Source: Mytilus trossulus (taxonomy: Eukaryota). From it: a stretch of 64,000 bases of DNA. The stretch lies in the NCBI RefSeq assembly GCF_036588685.1, contig NC_086373.1, positions 93,062,001 through 93,126,000 on the forward strand. Reading direction: 5' to 3'. The notes below the pieces were generated by a model. The model saw nothing but the letters and a program-made list of their open reading frames with translations. It ran no database searches and was not told the DNA's origin. Positions within the stretch are counted from its first letter, which is position 1. Each line of letters begins with the position of its first letter. Positions 6,791 to 39,206 of this stretch are shown in pieces. Made by a program: the position numbers and the translations under genes.

Positions 6791-7351
6791 GGAACTTATA
6801 AAGATTGATACTTTGGGGAGGAGTTGAAACCTAAATTTCGTATTAATTTCGAAATCTATAAACGGATAATTTACGATCTGTTTATTATCAATCTTGTCAG
6901 CAACAAAGTACTGAATTCTTAGCAGATGATACCCTCGAGGAGTAATTGTCACATAGCAGGGGTTTCGACCAAATGCTATGAAAAATGAAAAAAAAACCTT
7001 GATAATTTCTTGCGCCTCACGCGCTATTCTGGATTTACGTTAATCAGGACTACACATTTTGTCGATTGGATTCTTTTGTATACCTATATATTGTTAGACA
7101 ATTCATCAAGGATAAGGGTTTATCTTCAACGCATGGTTTTGCTATATCGTATATTTTGTCATTTTTGAATATGGTAATGAGAGCAAATCTTTAATAGTAT
7201 CTGTTAAATTTGTTGGCATCTCTTTATACTGTAGAAGATAAGACCAGGGCATTTTGTAGAGACCACTATTTTTTTGTAGAACGCCATACATTGTCGTCCA
7301 GATGTTTGTTATTGTAACGTTAGGTTGCTGTCTCGTTGATGTATAACCCAT

Positions 7352-7526
7352 AGATTTTAGTAAAAAAAGTAAAAGTAAAAAGTAAGCATCACAAAAGTCA
7401 GTTAATCGCATGAGTGTTAACGGGACCAATTATGTTACAGATTTTAGTAAAAAAAAGTTTAAAAAAAAGTTAAGCATCACAAAAGTCGGTTAATCGCATG
7501 GGTGTTAACGGGACCAAATACGTTAC
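7352..7526. repeat. Tandem duplication of about 88 bp
   Basis: AGATTTTAGTAAAAAAA...AAGCATCACAAAAGTC...GTGTTAACGGGACCAA occurs twice in direct succession. Confidence 0.85.
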
Positions 7527-7761
7527 TACATATCTAGATCCATTAAAAAAAATAATCACAAGTAATTTTTGTCACTAAATATGATTTTGAACTGTAAAAT
7601 TTGTACTTCGTTGAAACACAGTTCTACTTATAATGAATATTTATTGTATCAGAACTACAATAACAGAAATTAAATTGAAAAAGAACAATTGCATTAAACA
7701 TAAGTACTAGTATATAATTTTAAAACAGAAATGGTCATCATCACTTTATTAGACCTCCTTG

Positions 7762-10518
7762 TTATATGCCAGTTTCACCATGCTCGGCGTGTTCTTTCGG
7801 TGTATTCTCCGCGAATTCATTGTTCTCATGCGCATCCATCTGTGGAAAAATCTGAGATGATCTAAAAAAGAACGTCAATAAACTCATCATAGATACCAGG
7901 ACTAAATTTGTATATACGCAAGACGTGCGTTTCGTCTACAAAAGACTCATCAGTGACAATGGAAATTAAAAAGGTTAAAAAGGCCAAATAAAGTACCAAG
8001 TTGAAGAGCATTGAGGACCAAAAGTCCTAAAAGTTTTGCCGAATCCAGCTAAGGTTATCTATGCCTGAGGTAGAAAAGCCTTAGTATTTCAAAAATTCAA
8101 AATTTTGTAAACATATAATTTATAAATATAACCATATCAATGATAATTCATGCCAGCACAAAAAGGGCTGACTACTGGCCTTGTGATACCCTCGGATAAA
8201 TAAATCTCCACCAGCATTGGCATCGACCCAGTGGTAGCAAATAAACTCATCATAGATACCAGGACTAAATTTTGTATATACACCAGACTCGCGTTTCGTC
8301 TACAAAAGACTCATCAGTGACGCTCGAATCCAAAAAAAGTTAAAAAGGCCAAATGAAGTACGAAGTTGAAGAGTATTGAGGACCAAAAGTCCTAAAAGTT
8401 TTGCCAAAACCAGCTAAGGTAATCCATACCTGAGGTAGAAAAGCCTTAGTATTTCAAAAATTCTAAATTTTGTTAACAGGTAATTTATAAATATAACCAT
8501 TTCAATGATAATTCATGTCAGCACAAAAAGGGCTGACTACTGGGCTTGTGATACCCTTTGGGGAAATAAATCTCCACCAGCAGAGGCATCGACCTAGTGG
8601 TTGTAAATAAACTCATCATAGAAACCAGGACTACATTTTGTATATACGCCAGACACGCGTTTCGTCTACAAAAGACTCATCACTGACGCTCGAATCCAAA
8701 AAAGTTAAAAAGGCAAAAATGAAGAACGAAGTTGAAGACAATCGAGGACCAAAAGTCCTAAAAGTTTTTCCAAATCCAGCTAAGGTCAGCTATGCCTGAT
8801 GTAGAAAAGCCTTAAACAAATATTTATATATATAAAAAGTAAGAAATGAGTTAAACTTTTAGATCTATGAGGTTGATTGAAGTATACAGTTTGGCTGGCA
8901 GTGGTTATCTACTTTACTCTTGCCAAGTAAACAGTCAACTAATTTCAGATTCTGTTAGATGAAGACTTTACCATTTCCCTTCTCAATTTTATTCTAGATA
9001 GCGATACAGATAAAAAGACTGTGCATTTATAATTTATGTATCTCCACAAACCCGTCCCGTGGTTACCTTTAACCGCCTATGAAGTTTATACTACGTATCA
9101 CTTACATAATGAGACAGTTATAATTTCATGGCAATAGAAGCAATAGAAAATTGATCAAGAATCGGATCGATAGTTTTTGGATACAAAGGTTTGATTAAAA
9201 AATCAATATATCGTCTAGTGTGTTGTTTTATATGCAAATACACTGATTCGAATTGACTGAAAAATGAGACTAAATCCACTGCATATGTTAGGTAAAGACC
9301 TCAATATATTTATATTACAGATTTTATTGAGCTCTTTGGATGGTTCCGTACGGCAAGATATATCATCTATCCTTCTATTGCACATTTACAATAGAGCCTC
9401 ACTTTCAATTTTTCAACTGATGCATGCATACAATATTTTACATAGTATATTTTCTATATATTCAAATTGCAACGTACCCTTTATTTTCAGAGAATTTCAG
9501 ATTTTGCACACTTGCACAATCTAAACATCTGCAGGTGCATCGATTTCCATAAGCGAATGCTGAATAGCATTTATATCCTTTGCTTCTACATCGATTTCTG
9601 CATCTGGTACGACAATCTGCTTCTGACTCATCAACTAAAAGAAATTACAACATAGATATATCAATAAAATGTGCTTATATTGTTGTCGAATGTATAACTA
9701 TTAAACCCATAACTTTTATAAGCTTCTTTACAGGGTTTTTCGGAAAAAACATATTTGGGATCTAGATTCTTCTCGAAATGGACAAATCACATGAAAGAAA
9801 TAATTATGAAGAAACTGGGTTACCTTCGTGTAAAATTTATAAATGTTTTTTTTAAAAAAACCGCTGAATCAAATCGTCTATTTATCGAAACCACGATCCA
9901 GTTCTCTTTTTATTTGGTTCTGACGTCCCTGAATTTGTTATAGCCATAATCGATACAATATGTGCCACATGTTGAGCAGAACTGCAACTCATTTAGGGCA
10001 CATGCTATTACACCTGGGTCTAACTTAGGCTCGTCTTGCTCAGTCTTTAGTCTTTTATGAAGTGTTTTGTAGACTGTCTCTATAGTTGGTTTGATTCCCT
10101 CGGTTTTATTTTGTAACCCGGATTTGTTTTCTTTCAATCGATTTATGACTTTTGGGCAGCGGTATACTACTGTTGCCTTTGTTTGTTTTTTCGTCGTTTT
10201 TCGTGAATTACCTTGATATTGCCTGGTTTCTTTTAACACGATTTTGTTTGTTCTTCCGGTCACAATTTTGTTCATCCTTTTCATTCACAGTTTTGTTAAT
10301 ATTACGTCCCAAAAGTTCTCATACTGCAATGTGCTGTGTCAAATATTTTGCCGTTATCGTTTATTATTGATAAAAATAACACAAAAAGGACTTTACATTT
10401 TAATAAGCTGGTCAAAAGATCATGTATCATTAAGTTATAGAAACACGCATTATGTGGGGTACATACCTAGTATAAGAAGTACTGCAAGGGCAATAGTCAG
10501 AATAATCGGTACCTTCAT
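7762..10518 (-). CDS. Divergent mytilin precursor with shifted 4th cysteine (102 aa)
   Basis: Coding exons 10518-10467, 9634-9478 (157 nt, same length as in paralogs) and 7861-7762 have canonical GT/AG and an open frame. Translation: MKVPIILTIALAVLLILVDESEA | DCRTRCRNRCRSKGYKCYSAFAYGNRCTCRCLDC | ASVQNLKFSENKGSSQIFPQMDAHENNEFAENTPKEHAEHGETGI. Exon 2 starts at 10547; exon 1 is about 10960-10920. Confidence 0.9.
7876..8814 (-). mobile_element. Non-LTR retrozyme array: about 2.6 tandem units of 363-366 bp, each with a type I hammerhead ribozyme motif
   Basis: Units start at 7878, 8241 and 8607. Minus-strand consensus GCGTCA-CTGATGA-GTCT-TTTGT-AGAC-GAAA-CGCGNG-TC-TGGCGT reads as stem I, catalytic core, stem II, short near-palindromic stem III and a GUC cleavage site. 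Confidence 0.88.
8279..8325 (-). ncRNA. Minimal type I hammerhead ribozyme (best-preserved copy)
   Basis: Minus strand GAGCGTCA CTGATGA GTCT TTTGT AGAC GAAA CGCGAG TC TGGTGTA. All core nucleotides are intact, stem I pairs with G-U wobbles, and cleavage is predicted between 8286 and 8285. Confidence 0.8.
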
Positions 10519-17582: not shown

Positions 17583-19560
17583 GTTTCTATTTTGGTTTCT
17601 ATTTTGATGTCTACGACGGAAATACGTCTTGTTTTCGTACTGGTTTTTTTTTTCTGAAATCTAGGGCGTTGAAATCTTAAGTTGAACATAGAAAACACAT
17701 CAAAAATAAACGTTTATAATGAAAAATAATTCATCGTGTTTAAAGCAAAAATTTGACCTATAATTGTTAACGTATTATACATTACAATTTGTTATCCTAT
17801 AGACACTCATCCAAATCTTCGTTCAGTTGTATATCCACGAACGAGATTGTAACATTGAGAATTAATTTGGATTATTTGCGATATTCGTTATCTTTCTGTG
17901 AAAAATCTTAGCAACAATTGTAAATCTGAAGAAAGTAAAGAAAAAAAACCAAAATGGGACTGCAATCATTTAATCAAGGATCAGAACAAAGGCATGCTGA
18001 ATAAAACAACAACAAGAAACAAATACAACACATCAATCAGAAATATAAGGACAAGGCGAATCAAATCTCAAGTTATCTGAATAAACTCATCATAAATACC
18101 AGAATTGAAATTTTGTAAACAAGTTAAAAAGGCCAAATAAAGAACAAAGTTGAAGAGCTTTTTTAGACCAAAAAATCCTATTTTGTTTCCAAATACAGCT
18201 AAGGTAATCTACTCATAAAGTATAAAAGCCTTAGTATTTCAAATTAAAACAAGTCAGTAACTGTGCTTCGTTAAACACCTGATGAATTGCTTATCGGACA
18301 TGTATGATTTTTTTTTATTATAGTAACATATACAATATTAATTTCAGGTATCTCAGTAAAATTAACGAAAAAATGTTAATAGATATTTATTCATTATCAA
18401 AAACTTCATTCATTATAAAAAGTTAATATTCTTACTTGTAAAAACTAAACTAAAGTTCAAAGAACATTTTTTTTCAACTGTGATACACGTCTCTTCGAGT
18501 TGACCAAGTCGTTTTGAATGATTATATCTGAGATGACGCACGGGGAAAGCACCCAACGGTTTGTGGATAGACAACTAGAAGAAATTAATTTCTATCTAAT
18601 TCAGTTCCTTCAATAATTCATAATATTAATTCACTTAGAAACAAAAAACTATGTCAACGAGGATATCCAAATGCAATTTAGGCTCTCTTTAAACAAAGAA
18701 CATACTAGTAATATAAAACGAAAGTCAATAATATAAAAAAGACCATAGCACAATACAAGATGACGAGATAAATAAATACCGAGCATCGCAAAAAAGGTTA
18801 AAATAAAGATATATACAAAGAGAAATAATAATAAAAAAAAACCAACACTTTAGATGACGAACAATACCGTATTCAGATCGCAAGACTTTATCTCGACCAA
18901 TATGCTTCACAAGGTAAATAAGAGAATGTACAACGAAATTTGAACGTTAAAAGAACTAACCTCTATGAAATCAGCCAAAAAATTTGCAAAACAGAAGTGC
19001 TAGCAAAAAATAAAATAAAAATGAAATACAATATCAAAGAAGGATGAAATCTACTAAAAATAAGCTCAACGTACTTAACCTGCTAATTTGAAATCATGTC
19101 AAGCTTTAATCTAGTATTTTTATCTTATATAGTAACTCAATTTTTACGATATTTCTTGATGGTATGCAAGTCTAAAGTTCTTTACAAAAAACAACAATAG
19201 CGTTTAATATACTGGCGATCATATTCTACGAAAATAAGTAAAGCAATATGACATCAGATAAGGTATAACAAGACTTTTAAATTAGCATTTATCAGGAAGA
19301 ACACAGCATTGTTCTACTTCAGCAATACAAATATGTGGTGTATAAGTCAGGGGAACCCAATTGCACCCTACACGCCCTCTTCCACAAACAAACAAAAAAT
19401 GAAGAAAAAAAGAAATATTTCGAAAGAAAGTATCCAACAGCAATTAAAAGTTGACCGTTGAATAAAGCTTGTCCAGAAACTATCATCACTTAATCATCCC
19501 GTTTATATGTAACTGTACTATTACAGTCAGCATAGTACCCTTGTCCTAAAACTCGTATTT

Positions 19561-20777: not shown

Positions 20778-23700
20778 TATAAACAAAATATAACAGGTGT
20801 AAAAATACAAAAAAAAAAAAAAAAAAAAGCTGGAGGTTATTTTTATTATTTCAATGTATTTTTCATTCATGTTGAAAAGTCCCATATATTCATATTCAAT
20901 TATGTGTATACTTTTTAAAAGTATTTTTGATAAAACATTATATTCTTACAGGAAAACAATTACAAATATAATTGTCATTAGAGTTCTGTATTTTTGTTGT
21001 TTTACTTTTTTACACTACGTTATTTAAATAAGAAGTAAACTATAGTGGCATTTTTTTCTTACGTCATTTTCGATTTATGAGTTTGAATGTCCCTTTTGTA
21101 TCTTTTATACCCCTCTATGCTGTTTCAATATTCTTCAACTTAGGGGACGGTCAGATCCCTTATAAACATGTTTTATCTCTACCAGGTTCTATATGTGCAT
21201 TTTTAAGTTTGCAGTCTATTGTTTAGTGGTAGCTGGTTTTTTTTGTCCGTTTTATTTGTTTTCCTTGTTTTTTGTTTTTTTAATTATTCAGGCTATTGGT
21301 ATTCTCGTTTGAATTTTTACGTATTTGTCACGTCTGGCGTTTTATAGGCGGCTCTACGGTATGGGTTTTGCACAAGGATAAAGGTCGCTATTGACCTACA
21401 TCTGCTAACATCAACGTCATGTGGACTCGGAGTTCTTCAAAACAAAGTTTTACTCTGCGTGCCATTGTGTCTTTATTTATTCTACATTGACTGGAGGAAA
21501 TAGGGGGGGGGGGTATTTGAATCTCCCCAAAAAGGGCAATTCCCGCCTTATTTTTGAGCCTTCCCAAAATCAGGAGTCTTTGAATGTTGTTTTTAAACAT
21601 TTTTTTATTCATTTGTGGTTTTGAGTTAAGTGAAAAAAAAATTTCGACCTCGGGGTGTTTTCTGCTATTTGTTCGGGTTTATTATACAATTCCTATGTAC
21701 CATACAGATCTAAAAACTTCAAAAAACTAAAAATCGGAAATACAATACTCGGCAAATTAAGGACAATTTCCAAAAACTCCAAACCAGAACAATATCCATC
21801 GTATTATCCTTCGTATCGACAATAGTACGAGAAAAGTTTCCTTTAAATCATTTTAAATCAGAAAAAAGTATGCAGACACATAACTTAAACAACTAGAATA
21901 CGTACTTTAGTCGCGAAATTTTATCTTTATGTCTGTGCATCTGTTTGTTCGTTCGTTCGCCATATTACAAGTTGAAATAGTGATTTTAGGAAAGTTAAGG
22001 TTTTTTTGTTCAATTTTATTAAAGATTTAGTAAGTGTGATCTTAATGAAATGAAATTTTTACAATATTCCCGAAAATCAAACACATAAAACGAATTGAAA
22101 ACAACTGTCATTTTTCCTTACTCGGTACAGAAATTTTTCCATCGGATAGAGACATTTAATCCGAGGTTCAGTGGTTAGGGAGTACCACGATCTTTACACT
22201 ATAAAGATCCTTTTCATCAAACTCTTTTTGTGGTCTATACTTGAAAAAAATATTTCATATTGGTTTTGGATTTGATATATTTGTCTGTGGTTTATAATTT
22301 TACTATTTGGTAATTTGGTGTTCATGGTCTAATTTATGTTTATGATGAGATCAGCCTTTTTCAATTCATGTATTTGAGCGTTTCCTTTGATGTAGTATAT
22401 GTACACCATTGTTTCAGGTAAGGGTGAAGGTTGACGCCAGATGAAACGTTCAAACCCGTTGCATTTGTTTGTTCTTTTCCTAAATCAGAAACCTAATATT
22501 CAGTGATTGTTGATTGTTGATGTGATACATAAGTGTTTCTCGTTTTTATACTGATGATACCATTGTTTTTCCTGTTTGAATGGTTTTACACTTGTCATTT
22601 TTGAAGCCACTTATAGCTTGCTGTTAGGTGTGAGACAAGGCTTCGTGTTGAAGGCCATACATTGACTTATAATGGTTTTTATTTACAATTGTAACTTAGG
22701 CGGAAAATGTTATCATTTGCATTCATACTTCACCTCCTTATATATATTACCTTATGAAAAAAAGGTGGATTAAATCTTGTTTTATAGCTTATTAAACCTC
22801 TCACATAAAATGCAGTGGCATATAATTATGTCAAATTGAACAATGTGAGAGGATAACAAACAGACTTAATTGATGAAAATGTGTGATACTGCGAATTGAT
22901 GGTGTCCTACCGTCACATACTTTTACTTTTTACTTTTTCAGGGAAAAGCAAGCTTCATTAATGATCAAAACTAGTGTTTGTCAAACTGCTGTGTAACAAG
23001 TGTAATTTTTCTGATAAAATGGATGGTTCAAATTTTTTATATATTTTCAAAGGGTCAAAGTTAATGTTTGTCAAAATTTTATGAAAATTAAACGAGATAA
23101 ATTAATTTTAGTGAAGGTGTTCTGTACCACCCTAAGTGTGATATATCAATATTGAAAACATACAATACATGTCTCGATCCAAAATAAATAACGAATTGTG
23201 TACGTTTGTACGAATATTACATAAATTTGCTATAACAGACAAATGACCATTTTGTAGAGTGGGTTTGTATGACGAAATCAGTATTTTTCATATGCATTTT
23301 GGGTCCTACATGCTCTTCAATTTTGTACTTGATTGGCGTTAAACCTATTTTAATCAAAGCGTCATTGATGAGTCTTATGTAGATGTGTCAAATTATAATT
23401 CTTGTACCTTTGATAACTATAATCGTTACTTTTGTCTATATCCGATAATTAAAAACCTGGATCTGCAACCAAATTTGAGATTTTTTTTATTTTGAAAACC
23501 TAAATTGTTATCCTTGATTTGTTATCGCCTTTTGATTTTGAAATATGGAAAATTGAAATCAGAATAACCGAAAGTTATGAAATGTAAACTGCATGTTTTA
23601 AATTGAATCACGATGGTACGTCAGTAACTATTACGACAAAAAACTACTTATCCATAGATGTAAGGAGATGCGGTATGAGTGCCAATTAGAAAACTCTCCA

Positions 23701-36184: not shown

Positions 36185-36312
36185 TAGGTCCTCAACTTTG
36201 TACTTGTTTGGCATTTTAACTGTTTTTATATGAGCGCCACAGATGAGTCTTATGTAGCCGAAACGCGCGTCTGGCGTATTAAATTATTATCCTGGTACCT
36301 TGATAACCATTT
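36185..36312 (+). mobile_element. Solo retrozyme fragment with a mutated hammerhead core, nested in another repeat
   Basis: GCGCCA CAGATGA GTCT TATGT AGCC GAAA CGCGCG TC TGGCGT carries U4A and a stem II mismatch. It splits the host repeat motif CTCCTGACTT..GGGACAGGCGC. Confidence 0.7.
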
Positions 36313-37861: not shown

Positions 37862-38682
37862 CATATGCTCTTCAGCTTTGTACTTTTTTTACTCTTTTTA
37901 ACTTTTTTTTTATTCGGCGTCACTAATGAGTCTTATATAGACGGAACGGACGTCTGGTGCAAATATAAAATTTAAATCCTGGTATTTATGATGAGTTAAC
38001 TTACAACCACTGGGTCGTTGCCACTGCTGGTAGAGTTTTTATTCCCCGAGGTTATCATCAGCCCAGTAGTCATAGCTTTTATTTTGACATGAAATATCAT
38101 TGATAAGGTCATTATCATAAATGAACTGTTTACAAAACATTGAATTTTTGAAATACCAAGGCTTTTTTTTACCTCAAGAATATGATACCGTAGCTATATT
38201 TGGCAAAACCTTTAGGAAATTTTCGTCCTAAATGCTCTTCAGCTTCGTACTTCACTTGGCCTTTTGCTTAACTTGTCACGATTCGAGCTTCACTGGAAAG
38301 TCTTTTATAGACGAAACGCGCGTCCTAGAATCAATGCCGATGAGTTTATTTACAACCACTGAATCGATACCACTGCTATTGGAGTTTTTTCCCCAAGGGT
38401 ATCACCAGCTTAGTTGTCATCGCGTCTGTGTTGACATGAAATATCATTGACATGGTCATAAATTTGAATTTTTGAAATACTTAGGCTTTTCTACCTCATG
38501 AATAGATTACCTTCGCTGTATTTTGCAAAAGCTTTAGAAATTTGTCACCTCTTCCACTTCGTTCTTATATGATTTTTTTAAAATTGTTTTGATTCGAGCG
38601 TCACTGATGAGTCTTTTGAAGACGGAACGTGTGTGTGGCGCAAAAATTAAATTTCAATCCTGGTATCTATGATGAGTTTATA
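37862..38682 (+). mobile_element. Older, degenerate retrozyme array (same family as 7876-8814, opposite strand)
   Basis: Reverse-complement homology to the intronic array. Three decayed hammerhead motifs at about 37915-37960, 38283-38325 and 38596-38641, each with core substitutions. Confidence 0.8.
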
Positions 38683-39206
38683 TATATACTATTTTTTTTT
38701 AATTCTAAACAGATATTTTTTTTCAATTTCATCAAGCGCAGCACACTATAATATGACCGAATCCAGTCATCTTTTTATAAATTTTGATTCGATACAGCAT
38801 CTATCTTTAATTATCCCCCCAACAAAATAGATGGAAAGGAGTATGTATACGAATGCTCGTATATGATCAATTCTAAATATGATGTATTTTGCAGCATTAG
38901 TTGTTAGTGCTATTAAACTCTGTATTCAACATATATTGATTTCGCTCTAATTTAATAATGTCAGCAGATGGGTAGTTTAGTACATCATTACCGAAGAGAC
39001 ATCTTTGTAGAGAATATGTCTGCTAAAGCTTAGCGGACACTAACGGTTACAGTCCCTTGCGAATTTGTAATCCTTGTCTCAGAAGTGCATATATAGGTGG
39101 TCTCTAGATAGAAGGTTGCTACGTACAACTAAAAAAATAATAGCCCCACTCCCCCCAGTTTCAGTGAGGTTCGATTCTGATCAATCTTTAGGTTTATATT
39201 TAATAT

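What the first reader, a model, noticed from the sequence alone, without database searches (positions are those of the whole stretch)
7862..8814. Self-cleaving ribozyme array in sense orientation inside the last intron of an antimicrobial-peptide gene
Seen: three tandem type I hammerhead motifs on the same strand as the mytilin pre-mRNA. Predicted GUC cleavage sites are at 8652, 8286 and 7922 (spacing 366 and 364 nt); the last is only 60 nt before the exon 4 acceptor, and the array ends about 15 nt from the AG. The middle copy has an intact core and stem I, the upstream copy has C3G, and the downstream copy has an intact core but a damaged stem I. Established: tandem minimal hammerheads with a palindromic stem III are non-LTR retrozymes, reported in Mytilus, which cleave as dimers and yield small circular RNAs. 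Inference: mytilin transcription could drive retrozyme RNA production, and cleavage could compete with splicing of exon 4, which encodes most of the acidic pro-region and carries the poly(A) signal. That would make the array a cis-acting attenuator of this gene.
Basis: partly seen in the sequence, partly recalled or inferred. Interest (0 to 1): 0.85.

Follow-up and report, generated by a model that had tools for sequence, protein, structure and literature searches.

The report
Decayed retrozyme array in mytilin intron
This is an old, mutated copy of a mobile element already described in mussels, which carries self-cutting RNA motifs and landed in the last intron of an antimicrobial-peptide gene. 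The gene is still spliced correctly, so this is an ordinary insertion and not a demonstrated regulator.

Summary
Observation confirmed. A 938-bp tandem array (7877-8814, minus strand, 2.6 units of 364-366 nt) carries three type I hammerhead motifs, with cleavage-site C at 8652, 8286 and 7922. It lies in sense in the 1,616-nt last intron (9477-7862) of a mytilin-like gene and ends 13 nt before the acceptor AG.

It is a copy of the published Mytilus galloprovincialis non-LTR retrozyme family (Cervera and de la Pena 2020). The family ribozyme consensus is letter-for-letter that of their clone Mg353. This genome gives at least 4,922 candidate loci.

The array has the family's usual insertion shape, with a fixed 3' end and a truncated 5' end, and is absent from the sister paralog. 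It is decaying: 6.4% from the family consensus, mostly by unit-private changes. The ribozyme positions have changed as fast as the rest.
- HHR1 has C3G.
- HHR3 has a broken stem I.
- HHR2 alone is formally intact, but weakened.

A spliced exon 3-exon 4 RNA contig shows that the intron is removed correctly. RNA contigs over the array carry family-consensus letters, not this locus's own. The attenuator idea is unsupported but not excluded.

The scan already holds 138 notes on such arrays in this genome, including another sense-intronic one.

The parts
7877..8814 (-). Retrozyme array: 5'-truncated unit (family positions 203-364), two full units (8651-8286 and 8285-7922) and a terminal 45-nt partial unit ending at family position 46
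   Evidence: TRF. BLAST of the unit against the window and the loci. Comparison with the family consensus. GC 36.8%. No ORF of 60 aa or more.
8646..8689 (-). HHR1: hammerhead motif with C3G in the catalytic core (GUGAUGA) and loop III GCGU; C17 at 8652
   Evidence: (17.3 bits)
8280..8323 (-). HHR2: the only copy with an intact core and all 12 helix pairs. Stem I has C1.4U (a G.U pair) and loop III is GCGA. C17 at 8286.
   Evidence: 25.6 bits, full model; best hammerhead-containing fold -4.6 against MFE -12.2 kcal/mol
7916..7959 (-). HHR3: intact core, stem I with two non-pairs (1.2 U.C and 1.6 U.U), loop III GCAC; C17 at 7922, 60 nt before the acceptor
   Evidence: 20.2 bits; best hammerhead-containing fold +1.6 against MFE -10.8 kcal/mol
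7862..9477 (-). Last intron of the mytilin-like gene (GT at 9477-9476, AG at 7863-7862), 1,616 nt; 678 nt without the array
   Evidence: Spliced contig joint 9478|7861.
9478..9634 (-). Exon 3, encoding the cysteine-rich mature peptide
   Evidence: PDB search: the only hit is mytilin-B 2EEM, weak at E 0.95 but with the cysteine frame aligned.
7719..7861 (-). Exon 4: acidic C-terminal region ending ..GETGI, stop at 7764-7762, AATAAA at 7750-7745. The RNA contig ends at 7719.
7874..7882 (-). Branch-point-like UUUAU / UUGAC at the junction of the array's 3' end and the flank (A at 7879 or 7875), followed by the pyrimidine tract and the AG
   Evidence: Read directly from the sequence. Inference only, not mapped.

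Best explanation
The array is one old insertion of the Mytilus non-LTR retrozyme family, a non-coding, non-autonomous retroelement of about 364-nt units that each carry a type I hammerhead.

It entered the last intron of this mytilin paralog after the duplication that gave the sister gene. The insertion was a head-to-tail cDNA of 2.6 units, with the family's fixed 3' end and a truncated 5' end. The units were probably identical on arrival and have since drifted neutrally.

Today it is transcribed only as part of the intron and removed by splicing. HHR1 is catalytically dead, HHR3 cannot form stem I, and HHR2 may still cut slowly. Two working sites around one unit are lacking, so the locus is not expected to release unit-length or circular RNA. 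Any cut by one slow ribozyme is expected to have little effect on exon 3-exon 4 joining.

Inferred, not shown: because the array ends 13 nt from the AG, the present branch point must lie in the last few dozen bases of the array or at its junction with the flank.
For: - Family identity. The unit has 4,922 first-look candidates in this 1.30-Gb genome, with scored copies 82-92% identical. The consensus ribozyme from other loci equals that of clone Mg353 (supplement). The paper's description also matches: about 5,000 HHRs, 350-390-bp repeats, low GC.
- Insertion shape. About two dozen independent insertions end at unit position 43-52 (mode 47), while their 5' starts vary. This array runs from 203 to 46.
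- Empty site. The sister paralog's last intron is 693 nt, and the alignment shows a single 937-nt gap where the array lies. The two other paralogs also have ordinary intron ends.
- Decay. The units are 91.4-95.7% identical to the consensus, and 51 of 55 distinct changes are private to one unit. Ribozyme positions differ at 8/132 (6.1%) against 52/806 (6.45%) elsewhere, Fisher p = 1.
- Ribozyme state.
- Splicing. Run X22, contig record 25, joins 9478 to 7861 exactly. Its exon 4 variants (7793, 7811, 7834, and the insertion after 7741) recur in DNA contigs of run X2. Record 12 of that run extends from exon 4 across the acceptor into the array, 7742-7906.
- Kinetics. The mussel HHR cleaves at about 0.1 per min in vitro. 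Slow hammerheads in introns leave splicing intact.
Against: - HHR2 passes every sequence criterion for an active hammerhead, and its activity was not measured.
- The RNA evidence is one low-depth contig (4.5) from a run whose RNA label is a guess. Contigs cannot show RNA ends, circles or levels.
- The expressed allele in X22 is linked to the array only through shared exon 4 variants seen in another run.
- No target-site duplication was recognisable.
- The branch point is not mapped.
Confidence: 0.8

Rival explanations
1. The sense-oriented ribozymes cut the nascent mytilin pre-mRNA before exon 4 is joined, so the array acts as a cis attenuator of this gene.
For: - The array is in sense and its last cleavage site is 60 nt from the acceptor.
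- HHR2 has an intact core and all helix pairs.
- There is a precedent for an intronic ribozyme that tunes its host mRNA: the Cpeb3 HDV-like ribozyme.
- My own rough estimate (inference): if HHR2 kept the published 0.1 per min and splicing took about a minute, roughly a tenth of transcripts could be cut first.
Against: - HHR1 has C3G and HHR3 lacks a stable stem I. For HHR2 the best hammerhead-containing fold is 7.6 kcal/mol above an alternative fold that buries the cleavage site.
- There is no sign of selection on ribozyme positions.
- The family ribozyme lacks most loop-loop tertiary contacts and is slow even as the cloned, near-consensus copy.
- Hammerhead-cut introns are spliced normally, and only a fast HDV ribozyme aborts splicing.
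- The correct splice is observed.
Confidence: 0.08
2. Mytilin transcription feeds the retrozyme life cycle. Two cuts release a unit (for example 8651-8286, with HHR2's core acting in a double hammerhead on HHR1's site), and the unit is then ligated into a circle.
For: - The stem III loops of HHR1 and HHR2 could pair in trans at 7 of 8 positions. HHR2's 5' stem I strand matches HHR1's 3' strand perfectly. Both were worked out by hand and are inference.
- Family RNA is abundant in the runs laid here and in published northern blots.
Against: - At this locus's private positions, run X22 carries only the family-consensus letter: 8425 at 198/198, 8480 at 27.1/27.1, 8634 at 575.9/575.9, 8289 at 7239/7345. 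Contigs drop rare variants, so this is weak.
- 'Goes back about 360' joints also occur in the DNA run X2, so they reflect tandem genomic copies and not circles.
- The source paper does not report dimer dependence for the mussel ribozyme.
Confidence: 0.04
3. The array is a local tandem duplication or satellite that grew in place, not a retrotransposed insertion.
For: It is tandem and AT-rich. No target-site duplication was found.
Against: - The same unit occurs on most large contigs.
- Independent loci share the same 3' end at unit position 43-52.
- The array's own end, at position 46, fits that rule.
- The paralogous introns have an empty site.
Confidence: 0.03

Closest known systems
Mytilus galloprovincialis non-LTR retrozymes (Cervera and de la Pena 2020, Nucleic Acids Res 48:5054, PMC7229834; cloned copy Mg353)
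   Same: Unit length (364-366 nt against 350-390 bp), one type I hammerhead per unit, low GC, head-to-tail repeats and thousands of copies. The family consensus ribozyme from this genome is identical to the Mg353 ribozyme from the stem I 5' strand to the cleavage site.
   Different: This copy is 5'-truncated and about 6% decayed. Only one of its three ribozymes is formally intact. It sits in sense inside a gene's intron, 13 nt from the acceptor.
Intronic self-cleaving ribozymes that act on the host mRNA: the mammalian Cpeb3 HDV-like ribozyme (PMC10919898) and the amniote intronic hammerheads (de la Pena and Garcia-Robles 2010, cited in PMC7229834)
   Same: A self-cleaving motif in sense in an intron upstream of an exon, so cleavage could in principle compete with splicing.
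   Different: Those ribozymes are conserved across species, and the Cpeb3 one is kinetically matched to transcription of the next exon. Here the motifs decay at the neutral rate of their surroundings. They are recent transposon cargo.
Amphibian satellite 2 / axolotl retrozymes
   Same: Type I hammerhead in tandem repeats of about 330-350 bp, with a short helix III capped by a palindromic tetraloop.
   Different: The amphibian motifs need to act as dimers. The mussel motif has a two-pair helix III and cleaves as a monomer, slowly.
Non-autonomous elements mobilised by Penelope-like elements (PMC8557442)
   Same: Frequent 5' truncation, head-to-tail multicopy insertions and a fixed 3' end.
   Different: No sequence shared with the 3' end of a Penelope-like element was found in the 30 + 4 loci inspected here. 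The partner remains unknown.

Membership tests
Hammerhead ribozyme type I (Rfam RF00163) | Conserved core C3-U4-G5-A6-N7-G8-A9, G12-A13-A14 and an H17 cleavage site | tested here: met
   Met in HHR2 and HHR3. Not met in HHR1, which has C3G.
Hammerhead ribozyme type I (Rfam RF00163) | Three helices around the core, with helix I open | tested here: met
   In HHR2 all 12 pairs are standard. In HHR3 two stem I pairs are broken. Covariation across 47 copies is uninformative: 2 pairs have a change on both sides, a value reached by 45 of 500 shuffles.
Hammerhead ribozyme type I (Rfam RF00163) | Score at or above Rfam's gathering threshold (34 bits) | tested here: not met
   25.6, 20.2 and 17.3 bits. 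No hit at gathering. The short helix III variant scores low.
Hammerhead ribozyme type I (Rfam RF00163) | Self-cleavage at the predicted site | not testable with these tools
   Published only for a near-consensus family copy, kobs about 0.1 per min.
Metazoan non-LTR retrozyme (Mytilus family) | Tandem repeats of about 350-390 bp, each with one type I hammerhead; low GC; no LTR, PBS, PPT or ORF | tested here: met
   Period 365. GC 36.8%. No ORF of 60 aa or more.
Metazoan non-LTR retrozyme (Mytilus family) | Sequence kinship with the described family | tested here: met
   The consensus ribozyme and its flanks match the Mg353 sequence printed in the paper's supplement. They were compared by eye.
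Metazoan non-LTR retrozyme (Mytilus family) | Dispersed in thousands of copies | tested here: met
   4,922 first-look candidates, with scored hits on most large contigs.
Metazoan non-LTR retrozyme (Mytilus family) | Expressed as unit-length linear and circular RNA | tested here: inconclusive
   Contigs resembling the family are abundant in three putative RNA runs. Contigs cannot show circles. Nothing is assignable to this locus.
Domesticated intronic regulatory ribozyme (Cpeb3 / HH9-HH10 kind) | Purifying selection on the ribozyme relative to its flanks | tested here: not met
   8/132 against 52/806 changes, Fisher p = 1.
Domesticated intronic regulatory ribozyme (Cpeb3 / HH9-HH10 kind) | Measurable effect of cleavage on host mRNA | not testable with these tools
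   Only the presence of the correct splice could be shown.

The most novel reading that the evidence does not exclude
HHR2 (8280-8323) still self-cleaves in the nascent pre-mRNA, alone or as a double hammerhead with its neighbours. In that case a relic retrozyme lowers the output of one mytilin paralog, or lets an immune-gene promoter drive release of a 366-nt retrozyme RNA. It would be a natural invertebrate case of transposon-borne ribozyme cleavage competing with splicing.
Probability: 0.07. Interest if true: 0.55.

Novelty: already known. Interest (0 to 1): 0.2.

Why it matters
As it stands it matters little. It is one of thousands of copies of a published mussel retroelement, caught in an intron.

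It does show that an insertion ending 13 nt from an acceptor can be tolerated by a transcribed immune gene. The branch site is then probably supplied by the element's own end or its junction with the flank.

The family's fixed 3' end, seen again here, is a concrete clue to where reverse transcription of retrozyme RNA starts. A 2020 review by the authors who described these retrozymes says no such clue was known.

If the small chance that HHR2 is active held true, the locus would be a convenient natural system for testing ribozyme-against-spliceosome kinetics in an invertebrate.

Tried and rejected
- **Rfam at gathering thresholds:** nothing in the whole window. Only sub-threshold Hammerhead_1 hits appear with the E-value setting. 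A snoR11 match at 7830-7919 (26.4 against 50 bits) and a psRNA6 match are chance.
- **Covariation test of the hammerhead on 47 copies:** the family is too uniform (95% column identity) to say anything.
- **Target-site duplication:** none recognised at this insertion or in the flanks of the other loci.
- **Search for the autonomous partner.**
  - 30 GIY-YIG (PF01541) loci and 4 extended loci were inspected. They are Penelope-like elements with an N-terminal endonuclease. One has a 1,056-aa frame and is repeated in tandem every 4,277 bp.
  - Retrozyme-like pieces lie near 5 of the 30, but at no constant place or orientation. Their density is no higher than in this window (5 pieces in 64 kb).
  - No shared 3' tail was found, so there is no support for a link.
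- **PDB sequence search with the exon 3 peptide:** only mytilin-B (2EEM) at E 0.95. The cysteine frame aligns, but the hit is statistically weak.
- **Protein search on the joined exons:** not done.
- **Reads.**
  - All four runs are kept as contigs, so RNA ends, strand, circles and levels could not be read.
  - 'Goes back about 360' joints occur in the DNA run too, so they are no evidence of circles.
  - No contig bridging the upstream junction (about 8814) was listed.
- **Sense-strand poly(A) signals or strong splice-site look-alikes inside the array:** none.
- **Family consensus:** a majority-rule consensus of 40 genomic units of this non-coding repeat was computed only as a yardstick for divergence. 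It is not reproduced here.

Full report
**What is there**

Tandem Repeats Finder reports one array at 7877-8814 with period 365, 2.6 copies and 89% matches. Read on the minus strand, each unit ends with the same motif. It consists of a stem I 5' strand, CUGAUGA, a GUC/GAC stem II with loop UUUUGUA, GAAA, a two-pair helix III with a tetraloop, and GUC followed by the stem I 3' strand.

Rfam's Hammerhead_1 model matches all three places. The scores are 25.6 bits at 8280-8323 (whole model, E 0.0015), 20.2 bits at 7921-7954 and 17.3 bits at 8652-8682. All are below the family's gathering score of 34, so a default scan reports nothing. The exact core pattern is not expected by chance, with 0 in 100 shuffles. 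The three copies are repeats of one another, however, and do not count as independent finds.

The cleavage-site C is at 8652, 8286 and 7922.

**The gene**

On the minus strand the gene reads as follows:
- The coding part begins with ATG in an exon that ends near 10467.
- Exon 3 is 9634-9478 and encodes a cysteine-rich peptide.
- The last intron is 9477-7862, 1,616 nt, GT..AG.
- Exon 4 starts at 7861 and reads SSQIFPQMDAHENNEFAENTPKEHAEHGETGI-stop. AATAAA follows at 7750-7745.

The only solved structure that the exon 3 peptide finds is mytilin-B (2EEM). The hit is weak (E 0.95), but the cysteine frame aligns. Three paralogs in the window end in ..QGETGI or ..QGETGM.

I searched the exons one at a time by reference and did not join them.

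The array ends at 7877. Only gacgttctttttt separates it from the AG.

**What the repeat is**

The middle unit has 4,922 first-look candidates in this 1.30-Gb assembly. The 126 scored matches, 82-92% identical, lie on most large contigs.

Cervera and de la Pena (2020, PMC7229834) described about 5,000 type I hammerheads in M. galloprovincialis. They sit inside 350-390-bp repeats and are expressed as abundant circular RNAs. The authors classed them as non-LTR retrozymes.

Their supplement prints the cloned genomic copy Mg353. Its ribozyme, from the stem I 5' strand to the cleavage site, is the same as the consensus I obtain from other loci of this genome. The flanking unit sequence is plainly the same family. 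The element is therefore already known, in this genus.

**How it got there**

Across the 30 fetched loci, about two dozen independent insertions end at unit position 43-52, most at 47 (..GAGTTTATTT). Their 5' starts vary from position 1 to 337, and their lengths range from 410 to more than 2,400 bp.

The array here runs from position 203 to position 46, so it is a typical member. A second, older array in the window (37865-38684, plus strand) ends at the same place.

The sister paralog's last intron is 693 nt. Aligned with ours, it shows one 937-nt gap where the array lies. The other two paralogs also have ordinary intron ends. The array is therefore an insertion that post-dates the gene duplication.

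I found no target-site duplication.

**State of decay**

Against a majority consensus of 40 genomic units, the four pieces of the array are 91.4, 94.8, 93.1 and 95.7% identical. That consensus was used only as a yardstick. Of 55 distinct changes, 51 are private to one unit. This fits units that were alike on arrival and then drifted apart in place.

Ribozyme positions have changed at 8 of 132 sites, against 52 of 806 elsewhere (Fisher p = 1). Nothing has protected the ribozymes.

| Ribozyme | State | Best hammerhead-containing fold (kcal/mol) | MFE (kcal/mol) |
|---|---|---|---|
| HHR1 | C3G in the core | -11.2 | -16.0 |
| HHR2 | core and all 12 pairs kept; one G-C is now G.U; loop III is GCGA | -4.6 | -12.2 |
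| HHR3 | two of six stem I pairs lost | +1.6 | -10.8 |
| Family consensus | reference | -8.6 | -16.0 |

In HHR2, the loop III change helps an alternative fold that buries the cleavage site.

Among 44 distinct ribozymes from other loci, 31 keep the core and 19 keep the core and all pairs. One intact copy out of three is therefore unremarkable.

**Expression evidence**

One call each of the run finder and the read layer was available. All runs are stored as contigs.

In run X22 (organism A, guessed RNA), a 281-nt contig lies on 9611-9478 and continues at 7861-7719. This is the exact exon 3-exon 4 splice, so the intron with its array is removed correctly at least some of the time.

That contig's exon 4 variants (7793, 7811, 7834, and a 4-nt insertion after 7741) recur in DNA contigs of run X2 (organism B). 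One of those contigs, covering 7742-7906, runs from exon 4 through the acceptor into the array. The array junction therefore exists in another sample under another organism label, on the same exon 4 haplotype.

Family sequences are very abundant in the three putative RNA runs. At this locus's private positions, though, the contigs carry the consensus letter. In X22 the depths carrying the consensus letter are 198/198 at 8425, 27.1/27.1 at 8480, 575.9/575.9 at 8634 and 7239/7345 at 8289. Nothing points to RNA derived from this array, although contigs drop rare variants.

Joints that 'go back about 360' also occur in the DNA run and reflect genomic tandems.

**Would cleavage matter?**

- The source paper reports slow cleavage for the mussel ribozyme, about 0.1 per min for the cloned copy. 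It also lacks most loop-loop tertiary contacts.
- Dimer dependence is reported for amphibians, not for the mussel.
- As summarised in PMC2995048, Dye et al. 2006 found that an intron cut co-transcriptionally by a hammerhead is spliced as well as an intact one. Fong et al. 2009 found that only a fast HDV ribozyme aborts splicing.
- The Cpeb3 ribozyme shows that the principle exists. That ribozyme, however, is conserved and kinetically tuned.

My own rough estimate, which is inference, is that even at 0.1 per min and a splicing time of a minute only about a tenth of transcripts would be cut first. A weakened HHR2 at cellular Mg2+ should do less.

**A more concrete consequence of the insertion (inference)**

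The intron's earlier branch-site-like sequences (UUAAC and CUUAC, near 8840-8850) now lie about 960 nt from the AG. The present branch point must therefore be in the last bases of the array or at its junction. There UUUAU and UUGAC (A at 7879 or 7875) precede the pyrimidine tract.

**Verdict**

The regulatory reading has no support and several points against it, but it has not been tested directly.

The scan already holds 138 notes on such arrays in this genome. They include another sense-intronic one and a follow-up that saw a fixed internal 3' end in a different unit family.

Noticed in passing
L002-L030; window 7877, 18080 and about 38684: Independent insertions of the 364-nt retrozyme family all end at unit position 43-52 (mode 47..GAGTTTATTT). 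That is about 47 nt past the ribozyme cleavage site, not at it. Their 5' starts vary, with a cluster at 287-337. This fits reverse transcription that starts at a fixed internal site on a circular or multimeric template. A 2020 review by the authors who described these retrozymes states that no conserved priming motif was known.
   Followed up: partly
window 37865-38684 (+); also 18080-18243 (-), 23298-23383 (+), 36188-36279 (+): There is a second, older array of the same family: about 2.2 units, 73-78% identical, with degenerate cores such as CUAAUGA, CUGGAAA and GACGGAAC. Three short fragments also lie in the same 64-kb window.
   Followed up: partly
L062:2682-2925 and 8953-9154; L064:6478-6597; flanks in L009 and L013: A sister retrozyme variant has loop 2 UUAUGUA and a different 3' strand (..GUC|AGGCGUACUAAAUUAUAAUCCUGGUACC..). 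It may correspond to the second ribozyme family (HHR A/B) of the 2020 paper.
   Followed up: no
L061:3044-6211 and 7321-9999: A Penelope-like element with an N-terminal GIY-YIG domain and a 1,056-aa open frame is repeated head to tail every 4,277 bp. The same spacing occurs at several other genomic places. Observed only.
   Followed up: partly
window 8819-8850 (-): The intron's probable former branch-site and pyrimidine region (..aactcatttcttacttttt..) is followed by an AG at 8820-8819, right at the array's 5' edge. This is a potential cryptic acceptor. No RNA contig of X22 lies there.
   Followed up: partly
window 8266-8345 (-): In HHR2 the loop III change (GCGC to GCGA) lets GGAUUCG upstream pair with CGAGUCU. 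The minimum-energy fold therefore buries the cleavage site.
   Followed up: partly
window 7352-7526: An 88-bp tandem repeat (2 copies, 88% matches) lies downstream of the gene's 3' end.
   Followed up: no
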